Source: Dimorphilus gyrociliatus
Lineage: Eukaryota > Animalia > Annelida
Direction of reading: 5' to 3'
Assembly (NCBI GenBank): GCA_904063045.1
Contig: CAJFCJ010000007.1
Coordinates: 2,363,404 to 2,427,403 of the forward strand
Length of the DNA stretch: 64,000 nt
Of this stretch, positions 854 to 10,566 are shown one piece after another. The notes beneath the pieces were generated by a model that ran no database searches, was not told where the DNA came from, and worked only from the letters and a program-made list of their open reading frames with translations. The position numbers and the translations under genes are program-made. Position 1 is the stretch's first letter; every line of letters starts with the position of its first letter.

Positions 854-3800
854 ATGTCTGGTCCACAGTTTAATTTTTCCACCATCGCAAAAGCGAAAAA
901 GGAAGCTATCGTCGCTACGCCCGAGGAATATGTCAAACGATTCGGTGGTACTAGGGTTATATCAAAAATCCTAATTGCTAATAACGGTATTGCTGCCGTT
1001 AAGTGTATTAGATCGATCAGACGATGGTCCTACGAGATATTTCGCAATGAACGGGCCGTTAAATTTGTGGTTATGGTAACACCTGAAGATTTAAAGGCAA
1101 ATGCTGAATATATTCGTTTAGCCGATCAATATATCCCCGTTCCTGGCGGTACTAATAACAATAACTACGCAAATGTTGATCTTATCCTTGATATCGCTAA
1201 GAGGACAAAAGTTCAAGGCGTTTGGGCAGGTTGGGGTCATGCTTCCGAGTTTCCAAGACTACCTGAATCTTTACATCGTAACAATATTATATTTATCGGT
1301 CCACCTGAACATGCTATGTGGGCTCTAGGTGATAAGATAGCGAGCTCTATTGTCGCTCAAAGCTGCGGTGTTCCAACTCTGCCGTGGAACGGTAGTCATT
1401 TAAAAATAGAATATGACCTTGATCAGATAGCCAAAGGTGAAGTTGTCACGGTCCCTCAAGACATCTACACTCAAGGTTGCGTAGCTAACGTATCGGAAGG
1501 CCTAAAATCTGCCAAGGAAATAGGCTTCCCTGTAATGATAAAAGCCTCCGAAGGAGGTGGCGGCAAAGGAATTAGAAAAGTTAATCATGAAGATGATTTC
1601 CCTAATGCTTTCCGACAAGTTCAAACCGAAGTACCTGGATCCCCTATATTCATTATGCAACTGGCAAAGGGTTCACGACATTTGGAAGTTCAAGTTTTGG
1701 CCGATAAATACGGAAACGCCGTATCCTTGTTCGGAAGAGATTGCTCTATCCAAAGAAGACATCAGAAAATTATTGAGGAAGCCCCCATAACGATAGCACC
1801 CGAACATATTAGAACAAAAATGGAGAAAGCTGCCGTTACGCTGGCCAAATTGGTAGGCTATCAGTCGGCAGGAACTGTTGAATATTTGTATAATCCTACA
1901 GATGAATCTTTTCACTTTTTGGAATTGAATCCAAGACTTCAAGTAGAACATCCTTGTACTGAGATGGTATGTGATGTTAACTTACCATCTGCTATGCTGG
2001 AAGTTGGTATGGGTATACCATTGTGGAGAATTAAGACTATTAGAACTATGTACGGAGAAGATCCCATGGGAGATAGTAAAATCGACTTTGAGAATCCAGC
2101 ATATGAACCAAAGCCTAGAGGCCACGTTATCGCTTCTAGAATTACGTCCGAGAATCCGGACGAAGGATTTAAACCTAGTTCAGGAACAGTACAGGAATTG
2201 AATTTTAGAAGTTCGAAAAATGTTTGGGGCTATTTTAGCGTATCCGCAGCTGGTGGCCTTCACGAATTTGCCGATTCTCAATTCGGACATTGTTTCTCGT
2301 GGGGAGAAGACAGAAATTGCGCTAGAGAGAATATGGTTATTGCCCTAAAAGAACTATCGATTAGAGGTGATTTCAGAACAACTGTAGAATATTTGATTAC
2401 CCTCTTTGAAACGGAATGTTTCCAAAGAAATTCTATTGATACTGCATGGCTTGACAAGTTGATTGCCGAGAAAATTCAATCTGAAAAACCCGACCCACTT
2501 TTGGGTGTACTTTGCGGTGGATTACACGTTGCAGAGCAAACGATACTTGAGAATTTGCAAAATTTTCAATCAACACTTGAACGAGGCCAGATTCTACCTG
2601 CAAATTCTTTGAAAAATTCGTGCGAAGTTGAATTAATACACGAAGGCATAAAGTATAGAGCAGTCGTATCAAAATTAGGTCCAACAAGCTTTCTTATCCG
2701 CATGAATGATTCGTTTATTGAGGTTGACGCTCATCGTCTATCCGACGGTGGATTGTTAATATCTTTAGATGGTGACTCTCACACAACATATATGAAAGAG
2801 GAAGTTGGTGGTTATAGGGTTGTTATCGGAAATAAAACCTGTAATCTAGAGAAAGAAAACGATCCGGCTGCTCTACGCGCTCCATCCACTGGAAAATTAA
2901 TTAATTTCTTGGTTGAGGACGGCGCTCATATAGCGGCTGGTTCGGTTTATGCCGAAATAGAGGTCATGAAGATGATTATGGAATTAAGAGTTAACGAGAG
3001 CGGAGTAATTAATCATATTAAAAGATCTGGAGCAATTCTTGAAGCTGGCGACCTCGTTGCTCGCTTGGAACTCGACGATCCTTCAAGAGTTCAAAAGGCT
3101 ATCCCTTACCAGGGTAAATTGCCCGAAACAACTCATAATGGTAATGCTCATGGAGATAAACTTCATCAAATCTTTCAGAGATGTAAGCAAACGTTGATTA
3201 ACATATTGGATGGGTATTGCGAAGGAGAAGAACATTTCAAGAATCGAGTAAGAACAACAGTCGAAACTTTAATGAAATGCTTGAATGATCCGGCGCTACC
3301 ACTCCTGGAACTTCAAGAATTAGTTTCAGCAGTTTCTGGTCGTATTCCACCGGAAGTTGAAAGGGAAATAAAACAATCAATGGCTTCATACGCCTCGAAT
3401 ATAACGTCGATCCTATGTCAATTTCCTAGTCATTCAATCTCGAAATATATCGATTCTTATGCCGCTTCTATTCAAAGAAAAACCGAAAGAGACGTATATT
3501 TTATGACAGTTCAGGGAATTGTTCAACTGACCCAAAGATACTTGCACGGAACTCGTGGTCATATGAGGAACGTTGTTGCCGAATTAATTAAGAAATATGT
3601 AGATGTTGAAAAGCAATTTCAACATTTTCATTATGATAAGTGCGTTGCTCACATAAGAGATACGCACAAAAAGGATATGGCAGCCGTTTCAAGTGTTATT
3701 TTGTCGCATGCTCACGTTGCCGAAAAGAATACGCTTATTATTACATTGTTAGATCAGCTATTCGGCGGTGAGCGTGATTTTGGATTAACCGAGGATATGC

Positions 3801-6800
3801 AAAAACTTCTTACCGAATTAACAATGCTTAACAAGGTGGAAAATAGCAAAGTAGCCCTAAAAGCTCGTCAAATTTTGATAGCAGCTCACCAACCAGCTTA
3901 CGAATTAAGACATAACCAAGTAGAGAATATCTTCCTAAAAGCAATCGATACCTACGGACACGACATCAGCCCTGATAACTTGAAGGTAAGTTATCCTTTT
4001 ATACCCTTTTTGATCTATCCCTTTATCCATAAAATCATCATATACCAACAACAATATCATTTTTATATTTTATAAGTAAAACAATCAAAAATATCATGAA
4101 TTACTGTAGCAATTAATCAAAACCGAAACGCTTATATTCGACGTTCTTCACGATTTCTTCTTCTATTCGAATTTGGCCGTTCGTCGAGCGGCATTCGAGG
4201 TAATTATTGATTGAAAATTTTATATTTATGTTGCTTCAACAGAAATTAATTTTGTCCGAAACATCGATATACGACGTATTACCTGATTTCTTCTATCATA
4301 CTAACAAATTGGTTCGAATGGCTGCTTTAGAGGTGCGAGCAAAAACACAAACAAATAAAAGAAGTGTTACATATATATATATATATATTTTATATAAGCT
4401 ATATTTAATTTTGCTTTTAATCAGATAAAAAGCCTATCCAATATATATGCTTGATATATATATATACATACAATACATATATATATATATACCTAAACAA
4501 ATATAACGAGTGTGAAAGAAGTCTAATTTTTTTTATTTGAAAAAAAAATGGAGATTTTCTTCGATTTAAGAAAAATCATATCTTGTTTATGATTTCTTTA
4601 ATTTTTATTTACATGATTATTTCAATGTATATTTCTTATATTTAGGTCTATGTACGAAGAGCTTACATCGCTTACGATTTGAATTGTATTCAACACGATC
4701 TGTTGAAAGGAGATCTATGCATTGTTGAATTTCAATTTCTACTTCCGAGCTCCCATCCTAATCGTTTCCATCAGAGAAAAACTAGCTATATGCTACCTAG
4801 AGTATCGAGTTTAGGCGATGAAATGGCTGCCGTTGCCAATTATTTACCATGTCAGAGAACTGGAGTTATGGCTGCTTTTAGATGTTTCGACGAATTTGTG
4901 AGATATTTCGATGATCTTTTAAAAAGATTTGTGAAAACTAATAATTGTACAACAATGAATGGCGACGATGCATCACACCAATACGATAGTAGACGAAGTA
5001 GTTCTAGTTCTTTAGGAAGTGTCCTCGGTGATGATGAACCGATTCACATACTGAATATTGCTATATCTTGTAAACAGTAAGTTAACAAATCTTCTTTTTT
5101 TATTATTATCAATGATAATATCTACTATTGTTTTTATTTGTAGTGACGAAGAAGATAGAGAGTTAGCGGACAGATTTGAACAATTCTGTGTTCAACACAG
5201 GCCTGTTCTAAATGAACGTGGTATAAGGAGAGCAACATTTATTCTGCTTAAGAATAGAGAATTTCCAAAGTATTTCACCTTCCGCTCTAGGGAAGGATTC
5301 ACTGAGGATAGAATTTATAGACATCTTGAACCTGCTCTTGCATTCCAGCTGGAAATTAATCGAATGAGAAATTTTAATTTAGAAGCTATTCCAGTAGCAA
5401 ATCATAGAATACATTTGTACTTGGGAAGAGCAAAACAAGTAGCCAAAGGCCAAGAAGTTACTGATTATCGTTTTTTCGTTCGCGTAATTATCCGCCATTC
5501 TGATCTCGTATCGAGAGAAGCTTCGTTCGAATATTTAAGAAGTGAAGGTGAACGCATGTTATTGGAGGCTATGGACGCCTTAGAGGTAGCCTTCGAGCAT
5601 CCTCTTTCCAAGAGAACCGATTGCAATCACGTCTTTTTGAATTTCGTTCCAACTATGGTTATGGCAGATCCGATCAAAATTGAAGATACCGTTAGAAATA
5701 TGGTTATGTGTTACGGACACCGTATTTGGAAATTGCGAGTACTACAAGCAGAAGTTAAAATGAACGTTAAGAAGACGCAAGAGAGTGAACCAATGCCTAT
5801 TAGGGTGTTTGTTAATAACGATAGTGGATACTATTTGGATATTACTACCTACAAAGAAATCAACGATGGTAAAGGTGGACAAGTTCACTTTGAGAGTCTG
5901 GGAAAGAAGAAAGGACCTCTTCACGGTCTAATATTGTCTACACCATATATGACAAAGGATCAATTACAATTGAAACGTTTCCAAGCACAAAGTGCCGGTA
6001 CAACGTACGCCTACGATCTGCCAGAATTGTTTAAGCAAGCACTAGTAAAACTCTGGAAGAAATACTACGCAAGTAAAGGTGAAGCTGAAGAAAACTTTCA
6101 AAATACCGAATTAGATTGTTTCTCTTTTGTTGAATTGGTAATTGGTCAAGACGGAAAACTAAAAGAATTTAATAGATTACAAGGCGAGAATGATTGCGGA
6201 ATGGTTGCTTGGAAATTCACCTTGAAAACTCCAGAATTTCCAAACGGTAGAAGTGCCATTGTTATAGCTAATGATATAACATTCCAAATTGGTTCTTTTG
6301 GACCAAAAGAAGACGATCTGTTTTTGAAGGCAAGCGAATTGGCTAGAGCCGAAGGAATCCCTCGCATATACGTGTCTGCTAACAGTGGAGCCAGAATTGG
6401 CTTGGCTAAAGAGATAATGCATCACTTCCGAGTGGCTTGGAAAGATGATAAGGATGTCGAGAAGGGATTTAATTATTTGTATTTGACTCCCGACGATTAT
6501 AAAAAGGTCATGTCGAGTGTTCACGTTGAGCATGTCGTGGAGAAGGGTGAATCCCGCTATAAGCTTCTCGATATTATCGGCGCTGAAGATGGTTTAGGCG
6601 TTGAAAATTTACGTGGCTCCGGTACTATTGCTGGGGAAACTTCCCAAGCTTACAATGAAATTCCAACTATTTCCTTGGTTACTTGCCGTGCTGTTGGTAT
6701 TGGTGCTTATTTGGTTCGTCTTGGTCAGAGAGTGGTTCAAACTGAAAATGCCCATATTATTCTTACTGGAGCGGGCGCTCTCAATAAGGTTTTGGGAAGA

Positions 6801-8258
6801 GAAGTGTATACAAGTAACAACCAACTTGGTGGTATCCAAATTATGCACAACAACGGCGTCACTCATACCGTTGTTAAAGACGATTTCGAGGGAGTTGAAG
6901 CAATTTTAAGATGGCTAGCATACGTTCCTCGCTGCAGAGATGGGCCTTTGCCCATATTGACGTCTCAGGATCCAATTGAGAGAGAAATAGAATTCAAACC
7001 GCCTAAAACCCCACACGATCCACGATTAATGTTGGACGGAAAGTATTGCGAGAATGGTCGATGGATTAGCGGCTTTTTTGATAAGAACTCTTGGGAAGAG
7101 ATGATGGCCCCATGGGCCCAAACAGTGATTACGGGCAGAGCCAGACTTGGTGGAATACCTGTCGGTGTGATTTGCGTTGAGACTAGATCAGTTGAGGCTA
7201 AGGTACCGGCTGATCCAGCCAACTTGGATTCAGAAACTCTAGTAATTCCCCAAGCAGGACAAGTATGGTTTCCCGATAGCGCCTATAAAACAGCGCAGGC
7301 CATTAAGGATTTGAACCGCGAACAGTTGCCTCTATTTATCTTCGCCAACTGGAGAGGTTTCAGCGGCGGTATGAAGGATATGTACGATCAAGTCTTGAAA
7401 TTCGGAAGTTATATTGTTGACGGACTAAGAGAATACAAACAACCGATAATCGTTTATCTACCACCCGGAGCAGAACTAAGAGGAGGCGCTTGGGTGGTTG
7501 TCGATCCGACAATTAACGAAAGACATATGGAAATGTACGCCGACAAAGAGAGCAGAGGCGGTGTTCTCGAGCCGGCTGGAACTGTGGAAATTAAATTTAA
7601 ACTTCGAGAACAGATAAAAGCCATGACGAGACTCGACGAAACATATCGCAAGTTGAAAAAGAGCTTGAACGAACCTAATCTAACTCCTGCCGATAAGATC
7701 GCTTTAGAAAAGAAATTACGTGAAAGGGAGTCTCTCATTGCACCTGTCTATCATCAAATTGCCATCGCCTTTGCTGATCTACACGATACTGCCGGTCGTA
7801 TGCAAGAAAAGGGCGTGATTAACGACGTTCTTACATGGAAAACATCCAGAAAATATTTATACTGGCGTCTTAGACGTCTATTGTTGGAAGAAACCTACAT
7901 TAAAAAAGTTCAAGAGCTCAATCCAACACTCAATGACGCCCAAATCAGAATGATGCTTTCAAGATGGTTTACAGAGCACAAGGGAGCAGTTAACGCCTAT
8001 CTATGGGAGGATGATAACATGACCGTTACCGAGTGGTTGCAAACTCAATTAGATAACGGATTACATAATTCAGGAATTGCCGAAAATCTCGCAGCAATCC
8101 GTAGAGATTACGCATTAGAACAAATTAAGAAAGTCCTGAAAGAAAACGAAGATATAGCGATGGATTCAGTTGCATACGCAATTTCAATCCTAAACGCTGG
8201 TGAGAAGAGCGAAGTTGTCAAAATGTTGAGCGAAAATACGCCTATGCAAAACTCATGA
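854..8258 (+). CDS. ACC: Acetyl-CoA carboxylase (BC-BT-BCCP-central-CT). Exons 850-3985, 4243-4332 (or alternative 4110-4199), 4646-5076, 5144-8258; an upstream exon is probably missing
   Basis: BC motifs [39 protein letters not shown]; biotinylation motif EVMKM; CT motifs [21 protein letters not shown]. Splice sites AAG|gtaagt 3986, cag|AAA 4243, GAG|gtgcga 4333, tag|GTC 4646, CA|gtaagt 5077, tag|T 5144 keep the frame. Confidence 0.98.
4110..4199 (+). CDS. ACC: Alternative (duplicated) ACC exon encoding [30 protein letters not shown]
   Basis: Preceded by ctgtag (AG 4108-4109), followed by gtaatt (4200). Exactly 90 nt, phase 0, no stop, aligns residue for residue with the downstream 90-nt exon [30 protein letters not shown]. 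Confidence 0.85.
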
Positions 8259-8913: not shown

Positions 8914-10566
8914 ATGGAACATCCAAGAAGTTTACAGTCAGCAATTAACCTTTTCTCAAAAGAAAAACCGATTGCAGATCCGCTGAAAGGTAAAATTGAC
9001 GCTCTATTGGAGTTCGATATCGATATAAGCCCACTACAGCCTCCTTGGAACGATGAGGAAAAGGTAGAGAAACTACTACAGTTCCTAGAAGATCGAATTG
9101 ATGAGGAGACAAACAATCGTAACCGTACGAATGTACAGTTAAGGACGCTTTGCGAAACCTTCAAGAAAACCTTTAGTAGGATAGGTGAACAGGCCTTGAA
9201 TAGAAATATAGATGTATATAAGGACACTTTACGTACAGTTGTTGAGGCGACGTCGCATCTATTTTCGGCTATGACGTTAAATATTACTTCAAAGAACGAT
9301 TATAATTATATAAAAAGAGCTCATAGTCATTTTGTTAGTGAACTCGAACTAATCAAAGAATGTATTAAAGCTGCGGAGGTTGTCAACTGTGATAAATTTA
9401 TACGGAAATGTCCAAGCGAATTGGTAAGATCAACCTCACAAGAAAACCTTAACGACTATAGAAGTATACAAATAGGAGGAGAGCTATTAGAAGAGAATCG
9501 CGAAGATTTCATCTATGATCAAAGGGATAGCGAGAAAGGAAGAGCAATTAGAGTTCTAGAATCCGTTGCTCTAGAGGATGAATTAAGTATTTGCGACAGG
9601 GAAGTTAAATGTCAAGTAAGTCAAGAGAATACTACTGAAGTCTTATGGCAAGGTAGCGGGTTAACCATGTGGAATCCCGATACGGAGCAAAAATACGATG
9701 GTTATAATATATCATTCGAGGCGTTTGAGGCTAGATTCAATGAGATAACAAGAAAATTTGGTAAATGCTCTCAATGGAAAAAGGCTGAACTATTGAAAAG
9801 ATGGACAACAGGATTTGCTTCCAAAGTGATTGTAACCGCTTGTAAAGATGAAAAATATCCTTTTGATAAGGCAATGATAGCACTACAAGAGAAATTTAAA
9901 GAGATGTATAGACCCGAGAAAGCAATATTTAATGAGATTCAACAATTACCTTTACTCTCGCCTTCTACAAAGATGGCACTCGCTGAAGCTCACCTAATCC
10001 TAATTAATATCAAACTTACTCTTCCAGAAGCGTGTATTGCTCAATCGACCTTAGAGTCGTCGGTTTTGAGAGTATTAAGTGATAAAATGGATTTTAATCT
10101 CCTGCGTCAATGGAATGACGTTGAATCGAAACTCAAACCTTCGGAATCGCGACTACTCAATCTAACCAACTTTATTCATCAAGTTGAAAAAGGATCAATC
10201 ATCTCCAAGGTGAGAGCGAACGGCGATTTGTCAAAGAATGAAATGAAATTCACTAACAATTCAGCGATGGAAAAATATCAAGTTGATAAATCTAACTGTT
10301 ACGGTTCGAAAAGAAACAGAGATTGTACTCTTCATCCTGGAAAACATTCTTATTCAAGATGCCCAGATTTCTTAAAATTGACTATCAACGAAAGATGGAA
10401 CAAAGCAATTGAAGATGAACGTTGCCTCAATTGCCTTAGAGCGGGACACCAGTTGCATCAGTGTAAATCAAGAATGTGTAATAGATGCGGAATAAGGCAT
10501 AATGATTCCCTGCATGATTCAAGAAAGTTTCCAACAAGAAATATTTCCGCTGAAAAAGTTTGCTAA
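8914..10566 (+). CDS. Intronless Bel/Pao-type retrotransposon Gag-like protein (DUF1759-like capsid region plus triple Cys/His knuckle), no pol
   Basis: 550-aa uninterrupted ORF; KYDGYNISFEAFEARFNEI...KKAELLKRWTTGFASKVI resembles the Bel/Pao gag core; C-terminal CTLHPGKHSYSRC..F....ERW......RCLNCLRAGHQLHQCKSRMCNRCGIRHNDSLH matches the Bel/Pao zinc-finger array. AATAAA at 10886-10891. Confidence 0.85.
   Translation: MEHPRSLQSAINLFSKEKPIADPLKGKIDALLEFDIDISPLQPPWNDEEKVEKLLQFLEDRIDEETNNRNRTNVQLRTLCETFKKTFSRIGEQALNRNIDVYKDTLRTVVEATSHLFSAMTLNITSKNDYNYIKRAHSHFVSELELIKECIKAAEVVNCDKFIRKCPSELVRSTSQENLNDYRSIQIGGELLEENREDFIYDQRDSEKGRAIRVLESVALEDELSICDREVKCQVSQENTTEVLWQGSGLTMWNPDTEQKYDGYNISFEAFEARFNEITRKFGKCSQWKKAELLKRWTTGFASKVIVTACKDEKYPFDKAMIALQEKFKEMYRPEKAIFNEIQQLPLLSPSTKMALAEAHLILINIKLTLPEACIAQSTLESSVLRVLSDKMDFNLLRQWNDVESKLKPSESRLLNLTNFIHQVEKGSIISKVRANGDLSKNEMKFTNNSAMEKYQVDKSNCYGSKRNRDCTLHPGKHSYSRCPDFLKLTINERWNKAIEDERCLNCLRAGHQLHQCKSRMCNRCGIRHNDSLHDSRKFPTRNISAEKVC

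What the first reader, a model, noticed from the sequence alone, without database searches (positions are those of the whole stretch)
4110..4332. Tandemly duplicated, apparently mutually exclusive 90-nt exons in the ACC central domain
Two exons of identical length and phase lie 43 nt apart: A 4110-4199 [30 protein letters not shown] and B 4243-4332 [31 protein letters not shown] matches the conserved animal ACC sequence. A is diverged but stop-free with intact AG/GT, and is missing from the ORF track. The 43-nt spacer is shorter than other introns measured here (50, 54, 57, 67 nt), and branch-point-like TTGAT/TTGAA lie only 10-15 nt from the exon A donor, the classic steric mechanism for mutual exclusion. 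The segment lies just before the phospho-regulated central-domain loop, so one gene could yield two differently regulated ACC enzymes. I know of no described MXE at this position in ACC.
Basis: partly seen in the sequence, partly recalled or inferred. Interest (0 to 1): 0.75.

Follow-up and report, generated by a model that had tools for sequence, protein, structure and literature searches.

The report
Swappable exon pair in worm ACC
The fat-synthesis enzyme gene ACC of the tiny marine worm Dimorphilus gyrociliatus carries two old, well-preserved copies of one 30-residue exon beside its regulatory loop. They are very probably used one at a time, which is a known splicing trick but one I found no description of for this enzyme.

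Summary
Exons A (4110-4199) and B (4243-4332) are in-frame 90-nt homologues (55/90 nt, 17/30 aa), each with AG/GT sites, 43 nt apart. They lie in the acetyl-CoA carboxylase gene of Dimorphilus gyrociliatus, shown by an exact match to NCBI DgyrCDS6195.

- **B is used.** Assembled RNA contigs from two public runs join 3985>4243 and 4332>4646, the B form.
- **A is annotated.** Both public gene models carry A and neither carries B. I saw no read with A.
- **A is not a dead copy.** In a related genome, constitutive ACC exons are saturated at synonymous sites (pS 0.70). There exon A differs at 6 sites, all synonymous (P about 1e-4 to 8e-4), and B at 3.
- **The cassette is conserved.** Both exons are among the most conserved 90-nt stretches of the gene, and the spacer is again exactly 43 nt.
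- **The duplication is lineage-specific.** A bryozoan, two nemerteans and a brachiopod have one copy.
- **Location.** The segment matches human ACC1 1122-1151, about 50 residues before Ser1201.

Verdict: very probably a functional mutually exclusive pair. This scan has noted many other candidate exon pairs in this genome, but not this one.

The parts
854..3985 (+). ACC exon 1, coding part (ATG at 854): BC, BT, BCCP and the first part of the central domain. Ends with a consensus donor AAG|GTAAGT.
   Evidence: Its translation is residues 1-1044 of NCBI DgyrCDS6195. RNA contigs end this exon at 3985.
3986..4109 (+). Intron 1 (124 nt; 138 nt in the relative). Only its last 20 nt or so are conserved; they hold the weak, purine/AT-rich acceptor region of exon A.
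4110..4199 (+). Exon A, 90 nt, phase 0-0. This is the diverged copy and the one used in both public gene models.
   Evidence: There are 6 substitutions against the relative L001:3814-3903, all synonymous.
4200..4242 (+). 43-nt spacer between A and B. Its length is identical in the relative. The first 10 nt and last 16 nt are conserved and the middle is variable. It must hold the branch point for exon B's acceptor.
   Evidence: The weak hairpin is not significant.
4243..4332 (+). Exon B, 90 nt, phase 0-0. This is the canonical copy and the one seen in RNA contigs. It is absent from the public gene models.
   Evidence: There are 3 substitutions against the relative L001:3947-4036.
4333..4645 (+). 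Intron 3 (313 nt). It holds a (TA)n-rich low-complexity stretch. Only about the first 13-20 nt are conserved.
4646..5076 (+). Exon 4: the end of the last CDL helix, CDC1 strands b1 and b2, the regulatory loop (with an RVSS motif) and b3.
5077..5143 (+). Intron 4 (67 nt).
   Evidence: Joint 5076>5144 in the contigs of both runs.
5144..8258 (+). Last exon: the rest of the central domain, the carboxyltransferase domain and the stop codon.
4090..4345 (+). Conserved nucleotide island that covers the A-spacer-B cassette and its immediate intron flanks.
   Evidence: Alignment with the relative. Sliding-window comparison with the constitutive exons.

Best explanation
A and B are a functional pair of mutually exclusive exons in the single acetyl-CoA carboxylase (ACC) gene of Dimorphilus gyrociliatus. 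They arose by tandem duplication of an ancient 90-nt exon somewhere in the annelid/dinophilid lineage.

Each mRNA takes one copy: 1>B>4 (shown) or 1>A>4 (annotated, inferred). Both give a 2255-aa enzyme. The two enzymes differ in 13 of the 30 residues that form part of the four-helix linker (CDL) of the central domain. These are the helices that pack on CDC1 next to the phospho-regulated loop.

The most likely cause of exclusivity is geometric (inferred). Exon A's donor and exon B's acceptor are only 43 nt apart, so B's branch point must lie within about 10-30 nt of A's donor. The spliceosome can then use one of these sites but not both.

The depressed synonymous rate of both exons and the conserved spacer ends point to added regulation by RNA-level signals. 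The likely outcome is two ACC variants with different hinge or regulatory behaviour. This last step is inference only.
For: **Anatomy.** Both exons are in frame, 90 nt long, flanked by AG/GT and 43 nt apart. They are homologous: 55/90 nt, 17/30 aa, E=1.5e-8.

**Organism and gene.** Three window exons are exact substrings of NCBI DgyrCDS6195, which has the full ACC Pfam domain set.

**B form in RNA.** Contigs of a coral metatranscriptome (X1) and of a 2017 run of 'organism A' (X2) both join 3985>4243 and 4332>4646.

**A form in the annotation.** Both public models, DgyrCDS6194 and 6195, carry A at residues 1045-1074 and neither carries B. The annotation pipeline weighted transcript alignments 10:1 over ab initio predictions (PMC7854359).

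**Selection, from the related genome (L001/L002).**
- Constitutive ACC exons have pS=0.70 (saturated) and dN=0.038.
- Exon A has 6 differences, all third-position and synonymous: P(6/6) = 1e-4 to 8e-4.
- Exon B has 2 synonymous and 1 non-synonymous difference.
- Of 2020 sliding 30-codon windows in constitutive exons, 0.15% have 6 or fewer differences and none has 3 or fewer.
- The spacer is exactly 43 nt in both species and 35/43 identical ungapped, whereas the other introns change length and drift.

**Age of the duplication.** A against B gives pS=0.78 (saturated) and pN=0.28, so A cannot have been neutral for most of its history.

**No double form.** No contig or model carries A+B.

**Location in the protein.** The segment equals human ACC1 1122-1151, and Ser1201 lies 50 residues downstream. 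An AF2 model places the exon in the end of helix 81-89, helix 95-103 and the start of helix 107-121, just before b1-b2-loop-b3. This agrees with the published CDL/CDC1 description (PMC4833862).
Against: - No read or contig containing exon A was seen. Only assembled contigs of two runs could be laid, and contigs drop minor isoforms.
- The A-only public models could in principle come from the ab initio predictor.
- The minimum spliceable intron in this species is not known. The genome median is 66 nt, and a crude scan of this window gave 51-100 nt from only about 9 introns. A+B double inclusion, or skipping of both, is therefore not excluded, and either would stay in frame.
- No significant RNA structure was found.
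- The selection test rests on one relative of unknown name.
- Any functional difference between the A and B enzymes is untested.
Confidence: 0.75

Rival explanations
1. Exon A never enters mature mRNA, and the public A-form models are a prediction artefact. A is kept as an RNA element, for example a decoy or regulatory pseudo-exon that tunes inclusion of B.
For: Only the B form was seen in the RNA contigs of two runs. A has a weak acceptor without a pyrimidine tract. The whole cassette, including non-coding flanks and the spacer ends, is conserved at the nucleotide level.
Against: All 6 substitutions in A fall on synonymous third positions and the 30 residues are unchanged, across a divergence that saturates synonymous sites elsewhere. 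That is the signature of translation and not of an RNA element. The reading frame, the length and both splice sites are intact in both species. The annotation pipeline gave transcripts ten times the weight of ab initio models and still chose A.
Confidence: 0.12
2. Both exons are functional but not strictly exclusive. The 43-nt spacer is a real, spliceable mini-intron, so A+B (+30 aa) or neither (-30 aa) also occurs as a regular product.
For: Both exons are multiples of 3, so all four combinations stay in frame and none is removed by NMD. The species is adapted to short introns. The spacer ends can pair into a small hairpin, and other notes on this genome describe end-paired introns. Some vertebrate database models skip exactly this exon.
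Against: Both RNA contigs go 3985>4243 directly, and both public models are A-only. No A+B form was seen. At 43 nt the spacer is shorter than every credible intron found in this window and well below the genome median. A tandem repeat of these helices, or their loss, would disturb a conserved four-helix bundle.
Confidence: 0.08
3. Exon A was functional for a long time but has recently gone silent in D. gyrociliatus, so it is a young dead copy that has not yet decayed.
For: No A-containing RNA was seen.
Against: There is no disabling change in either species. A's residues are identical in two lineages separated by saturated synonymous divergence. The splice sites are intact.
Confidence: 0.03

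Closest known systems
Tandem-duplicated mutually exclusive exons enforced by steric hindrance, the classic case being alpha-tropomyosin exons 2/3 (my own knowledge, not tested here)
   Same: Two adjacent homologous exons of equal length and phase. The downstream exon's branch point is forced to lie very close to the upstream exon's donor, here within a 43-nt spacer. One of the two copies is included.
   Different: The host gene is different (ACC). The species routinely splices introns of 50-70 nt, so the steric limit is not established. Both exons are multiples of 3, so there is no NMD back-up. Exclusivity was not measured at read level.
[quoted passage not shown]
   Same: Alternative splicing of ACC in the central domain next to the phospho-regulated loop. 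It is reported to alter phosphorylation and activity in ruminant mammary tissue.
   Different: That is a micro-exon that is included or skipped, not an exon swap. It lies inside the loop region about 45 residues downstream of this segment. It occurs in vertebrates, and it changes length rather than helix sequence.
Other candidate tandem-exon switches noted by this scan in the same genome, e.g. anoctamin, AMPA receptor, CPT1, SAMHD1 (earlier AI notes)
   Same: Same genome and the same architecture: short homologous exons side by side, conserved in relatives. In some of them only one copy was seen in RNA.
   Different: Different genes. Several of those pairs are shared with other phyla. The ACC pair is single-copy in the bryozoan, nemertean and brachiopod genes checked here.
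ACC central-domain linker CDL and regulatory loop, as described for yeast and human ACC (Hunkeler et al. 2016, PMC4833862)
   Same: The swapped residues align to the helices that precede CDC1 strand b1, upstream of the b2-b3 regulatory loop.
   Different: No natural isoform variation of these helices is described there. The assignment to La2-La4 rests on the order of predicted helices, not on a superposition.

Membership tests
Mutually exclusive exon (MXE) pair from tandem exon duplication | Neighbouring exons are homologous to each other | tested here: met
   55/90 nt and 17/30 aa identical; reciprocal tblastn E=1.5e-8.
Mutually exclusive exon (MXE) pair from tandem exon duplication | Same length and phase, each with its own acceptor and donor | tested here: met
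   Both are 90 nt and phase 0-0, flanked by AG and GT, in the window and in the relative.
Mutually exclusive exon (MXE) pair from tandem exon duplication | Each exon is found in mature mRNA | tested here: inconclusive
   B: yes, in the contigs of two runs. A: only in the public gene models DgyrCDS6194/6195. No read-level evidence was obtainable.
Mutually exclusive exon (MXE) pair from tandem exon duplication | One and only one of the exons per mRNA | tested here: inconclusive
   No A+B or neither form appears in the contigs or models, but raw junction counts could not be made.
Mutually exclusive exon (MXE) pair from tandem exon duplication | Both copies kept by purifying selection | tested here: met
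   A: 6 synonymous and 0 non-synonymous differences. B: 2 synonymous and 1 non-synonymous. Background pS is 0.70.
Mutually exclusive exon (MXE) pair from tandem exon duplication | An enforcing mechanism: steric (intron too short) | not testable with these tools
   The geometry fits: a 43-nt spacer whose length is conserved. The minimal spliceable intron of the species is unknown.
Mutually exclusive exon (MXE) pair from tandem exon duplication | An enforcing mechanism: frame shift or NMD of double or zero inclusion | tested here: not met
   90 nt is a multiple of 3, so double inclusion or double skipping stays in frame.
Mutually exclusive exon (MXE) pair from tandem exon duplication | An enforcing mechanism: competing RNA pairings (docking/selector) | tested here: inconclusive
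   The cassette does not fold better than shuffles (z=+1.0). The spacer hairpin gives z=-0.7 and -1.3. There is one compensatory pair in two sequences.
Eukaryotic multidomain acetyl-CoA carboxylase | BC, BT, BCCP, central and carboxyltransferase domains in one chain | tested here: met
   The window exons equal DgyrCDS6195, whose precomputed Pfam hits are PF00289, PF02786, PF02785, PF21385, PF00364, PF08326 and PF01039. The central region aligns to human ACC1 structures at E=4e-76.
Mammalian Acc1 exon-28-type cassette | An 8-residue micro-exon inside the regulatory loop region that is included or skipped | tested here: not met
   Here a 30-residue exon is swapped, upstream of strands b1 and b2.

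The most novel reading that the evidence does not exclude
The A/B choice is a regulated switch, by stage, tissue or sex (dwarf males against females). It changes how the CDL helices clamp CDC1 beside the phospho-loop. One gene would then make a phosphorylation-sensitive and a less sensitive or differently hinged ACC. That would be a splicing-based counterpart of the ACC1/ACC2 paralogue split of vertebrates, and a natural helix-swap experiment on the poorly understood central domain.
Probability: 0.15. Interest if true: 0.7.

Novelty: new member of a known kind. Interest (0 to 1): 0.42.

Why it matters
ACC is the committed, heavily regulated step of fatty-acid synthesis. Its large non-catalytic central domain is thought to act as a phosphorylation-controlled hinge.

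A naturally swappable pair of linker helices, preserved by selection next to the regulatory loop, would give two defined enzyme variants from one gene. Comparing them would be a direct experimental handle on what that linker does.

There is also a practical point. The public annotation of this genome lists only the diverged A form and lacks the canonical B form, which is the one seen in RNA. The case also adds to a growing set of tandem-exon switches in this compact annelid genome.

Tried and rejected
1. **RNA support.** Only two public runs hold this stretch, and only their contigs could be laid. X3 and X4 gave nothing. No raw reads were available, so isoform ratios and the absence of A cannot be judged.
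2. **Protein search with exon 1 alone.** The length filter hid full-length ACCs, and the best hits were only 59% identical.
3. **First alignment (A1).** It misaligned the last exon and was discarded. A2 was used instead.
4. **Search with the A-form region.** No A-like segment exists in any other annotated ACC. The high score of Acropora P0302 comes from an internal duplication in that model, not from an exon pair.
5. **Metagenome scans.** The exon 4 peptide found no relative. A degenerate pattern for the A-specific motif [10 protein letters not shown] gave one chance hit (L004, not ACC).
6. **Outgroup lookups.** Tubulanus X2 and Lingula X2 were not on record because only the longest isoform is. 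The lookups were repeated with the X1 isoforms.
7. **No other annelid.** No ACC locus from another annelid could be reached, so the duplication is dated only as younger than the split from Bryozoa, Nemertea and Brachiopoda and older than the split from the unnamed relative.
8. **RNA structure.** The cassette does not fold better than shuffles. The spacer hairpin is weak and not significant.
10. **Minimum intron size.** It is not given in the genome paper. My ab initio scan found too few introns to set a limit.
11. **Literature.** No paper describes an ACC mutually exclusive exon pair.

Full report
**1. The observation**

- Exon A (4110-4199) and exon B (4243-4332) are each 30 open codons.
- Each is preceded by AG and followed by GT.
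- They are separated by a 43-nt spacer.
- The upstream exon ends at 3985 with a consensus donor. The next exon starts at 4646.
- A and B share 55/90 nt and 17/30 residues. They find each other by tblastn at E=1.5e-8, with no third copy in the gene.
- B matches the vertebrate consensus at 25/30 positions and A at 18/30.

**2. Gene and organism**

Earlier notes of this scan named the genome Dimorphilus gyrociliatus, and I checked this.

A profile was made from a bryozoan ACC plus the window's exons. The exons were entered as separate rows by reference and were not joined. It retrieved NCBI DgyrCDS6195, 2255 aa. The translations of window 854-3985, 4646-5074 and 5145-8255 are exact substrings of that protein. 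The protein carries the full ACC domain set.

The gene here runs as follows:
- exon 1: 854-3985
- exon A: 4110-4199, or exon B: 4243-4332
- exon 4: 4646-5076
- last exon: 5144-8258

**3. Which exon is used**

Only two public runs hold the stretch. Laying their contigs shows the same joints in both, 3985>4243, 4332>4646 and 5076>5144, which is the B form. One run is a coral metatranscriptome. The other is a 2017 run of 'organism A' whose record does not give its kind. No contig contains A, but contigs drop minor isoforms, so this does not show that A is absent.

Unexpectedly, both public gene models, DgyrCDS6194 and 6195, contain exon A at residues 1045-1074 and neither contains B. The two models differ only by a 46-residue N-terminal extension. 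The genome paper states that transcript alignments were weighted 10 against 1 for ab initio and protein evidence (PMC7854359). An A-containing transcript is therefore plausible, but it is not proven here.

In short, one form is seen in RNA and the other is in the annotation. An A+B form is seen in neither.

**4. Is A alive?**

The 90% cluster of DgyrCDS6195 also holds two ORF products from Logan assemblies of SRR23372228 and SRR23372229. Their contigs (L001-L003) are genomic DNA of a related but clearly different animal.
- Its ACC protein is about 94% identical.
- Synonymous sites in constitutive exons are saturated (pS=0.70, dN=0.038).
- The neighbouring gag-like gene is only 42% identical.

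L001 contains both exons in the same order, with intact AG/GT sites and a spacer of exactly 43 nt.

| Feature | Differences from the window | Note |
|---|---|---|
| Exon A | 6, all third-position and synonymous; all 30 residues identical | P(6/6 synonymous by chance) = 1e-4 to 8e-4, depending on transition bias |
| Exon B | 2 synonymous, 1 Ala>Ser | |
| 2020 sliding 30-codon windows of the constitutive exons | median 16 | 0.15% have 6 or fewer, none has 3 or fewer |

Both exons are therefore also unusually conserved at silent sites.

The conserved island runs from about 20 nt upstream of A to about 13-20 nt downstream of B. Beyond it the introns drift and change length: 124 against 138 nt, and 67 against 68 nt with many gaps.

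Protein-level constraint on A rules out a dead copy. Constraint on silent sites and on the intron flanks is what regulated alternative exons typically show (established knowledge).

A against B has saturated synonymous sites (pS=0.78) but pN of only 0.28. The duplication is therefore old, and A has been under selection for most of that time.

**5. Age and spread**

- The 30-residue unit is ancient. Several vertebrate database models skip exactly it.
- In Watersipora and Tubulanus it is a discrete 90-nt exon with AG/GT sites. In Lingula and Lineus the 5' intron is missing, and the 3' intron is present in all four.
- In these four outgroup genes the segment is single-copy.
- RefSeq isoforms of Lingula, Tubulanus, Lineus, Haliotis, Biomphalaria, Aplysia, Liolophura, Mytilus and Pecten show no variation within it.
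- A search with the A-form region found no A-like segment in any other annotated ACC.
- A departs from four nearly invariant residues of animal ACCs: K>Q, S>T, H>Y and L>F.

The duplication therefore arose after the split from bryozoans, nemerteans and brachiopods, and before the split from the unnamed relative. No other annelid ACC locus could be fetched.

**6. Mechanism**

*Shown.* The 43-nt spacer has a conserved length. Its conserved ends are the A donor region (first 10 nt) and the B acceptor region (last 16 nt). Its middle is variable.

*Inferred.* B's branch point must lie in this spacer, so within a few tens of nucleotides of A's donor. Using A's donor and B's acceptor in the same molecule is then sterically unlikely. 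A would have to join exon 4, and B would have to be joined from exon 1.

*Caveats.*
- The species' median intron is 66 nt and its spliceosome copes well with short introns.
- My small ab initio sample gave 51-100 nt, which does not set a lower limit.
- NMD cannot help, because 90 is a multiple of 3.
- The spacer can form a small hairpin that pairs A's donor with B's pyrimidine tract (-6.7 and -8.5 kcal/mol). It is no better than shuffles (z=-0.7 and -1.3), and the cassette as a whole is not structured (z=+1.0).

**7. What changes in the enzyme**

The central region aligns to human ACC1 structures at E=4e-76. The segment equals human residues 1122-1151, and Ser1201 lies 50 residues downstream.

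An AlphaFold2 model of the A-form region (mean pLDDT 75.5; above 90 over the second half of the segment) puts the exon in three places:
- the end of helix 81-89
- helix 95-103
- the first nine residues of helix 107-121

These are followed by strands b1 and b2, a disordered loop, and b3.

Hunkeler et al. describe the CDL as a four-helix linker whose helices La3 and La4 pack on CDC1 over 1,300 A2. They place the regulatory loop between b2 and b3 of CDC1 (PMC4833862).

By the order of these elements, the swapped residues are part of La2, La3 and most of La4. This is inference, not a superposition. The loop in exon 4 keeps an RVSS motif that aligns with the conserved regulatory serine. That the two forms differ in regulation is a hypothesis only.

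**8. Comparison and novelty**

Tandem-duplicated mutually exclusive exons are a well-known kind. I found no paper describing such a pair in ACC. The nearest known ACC event is the mammalian 8-residue exon 28 cassette beside the phosphorylation cluster. That event is of a different type and at a different site.

This is therefore a new member of a known kind. It is well supported by comparative evidence. It still lacks read-level proof that A is included and that the choice is exclusive.

**9. Limits and rules**

- The selection test rests on one relative whose name I could not find.

Noticed in passing
window 8914-10566; L002:4451-6127: The stand-alone gag-like ORF 656 nt downstream of ACC is present, intact (558 aa) and in the same position in the related genome. 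It is 42% identical over 504 aa. It is therefore a conserved syntenic gene rather than a recent insertion.
   Followed up: partly
window 4243-4332: The public annotation (DgyrCDS6194/6195) contains only the diverged exon A. It lacks the canonical exon B, which is the form present in the RNA contigs of two runs.
   Followed up: yes
upstream of window position 1 (not in the window); acceptor at about 848-849: DgyrCDS6194 has a 46-residue N-terminal extension, rich in Ser/Pro/Glu, from an alternative first coding exon that is not found in the window. ACC therefore also has alternative N-termini here.
   Followed up: partly
proteins P0127, P0247-P0258 (Haliotis ACC isoforms): Abalone RefSeq isoforms insert one or two optional micro-segments (about 8 and 14 residues) exactly at the junction before this 30-residue segment. 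The same exon boundary is therefore an alternative-splicing site in a mollusc.
   Followed up: no
proteins P0077, P0107, P0109, P0111-P0117, P0119, P0120: Several bird ACC models and one camel ACC model skip exactly this 30-residue exon. They may be prediction artefacts or a real skipped form in vertebrates.
   Followed up: no
protein P0302 (Acropora digitifera ACC model): The model repeats a stretch of about 180 residues of the central domain twice, nearly identically (806-983 and 1087-1266). This is probably an assembly or haplotype duplication and not an exon pair.
   Followed up: partly
window 4197-4239; L001:3901-3943: The two ends of the 43-nt spacer can pair, A donor GAGGUAAU with GUUGCUUC, in both species, while the loop differs. 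It is not significant against shuffles. It recalls the end-paired introns noted elsewhere in this genome.
   Followed up: partly
window 4362-4503: There is a (TA)n-rich low-complexity tract in intron 3. The reads tool skipped it as a repeat, and it is not conserved in the relative.
   Followed up: no
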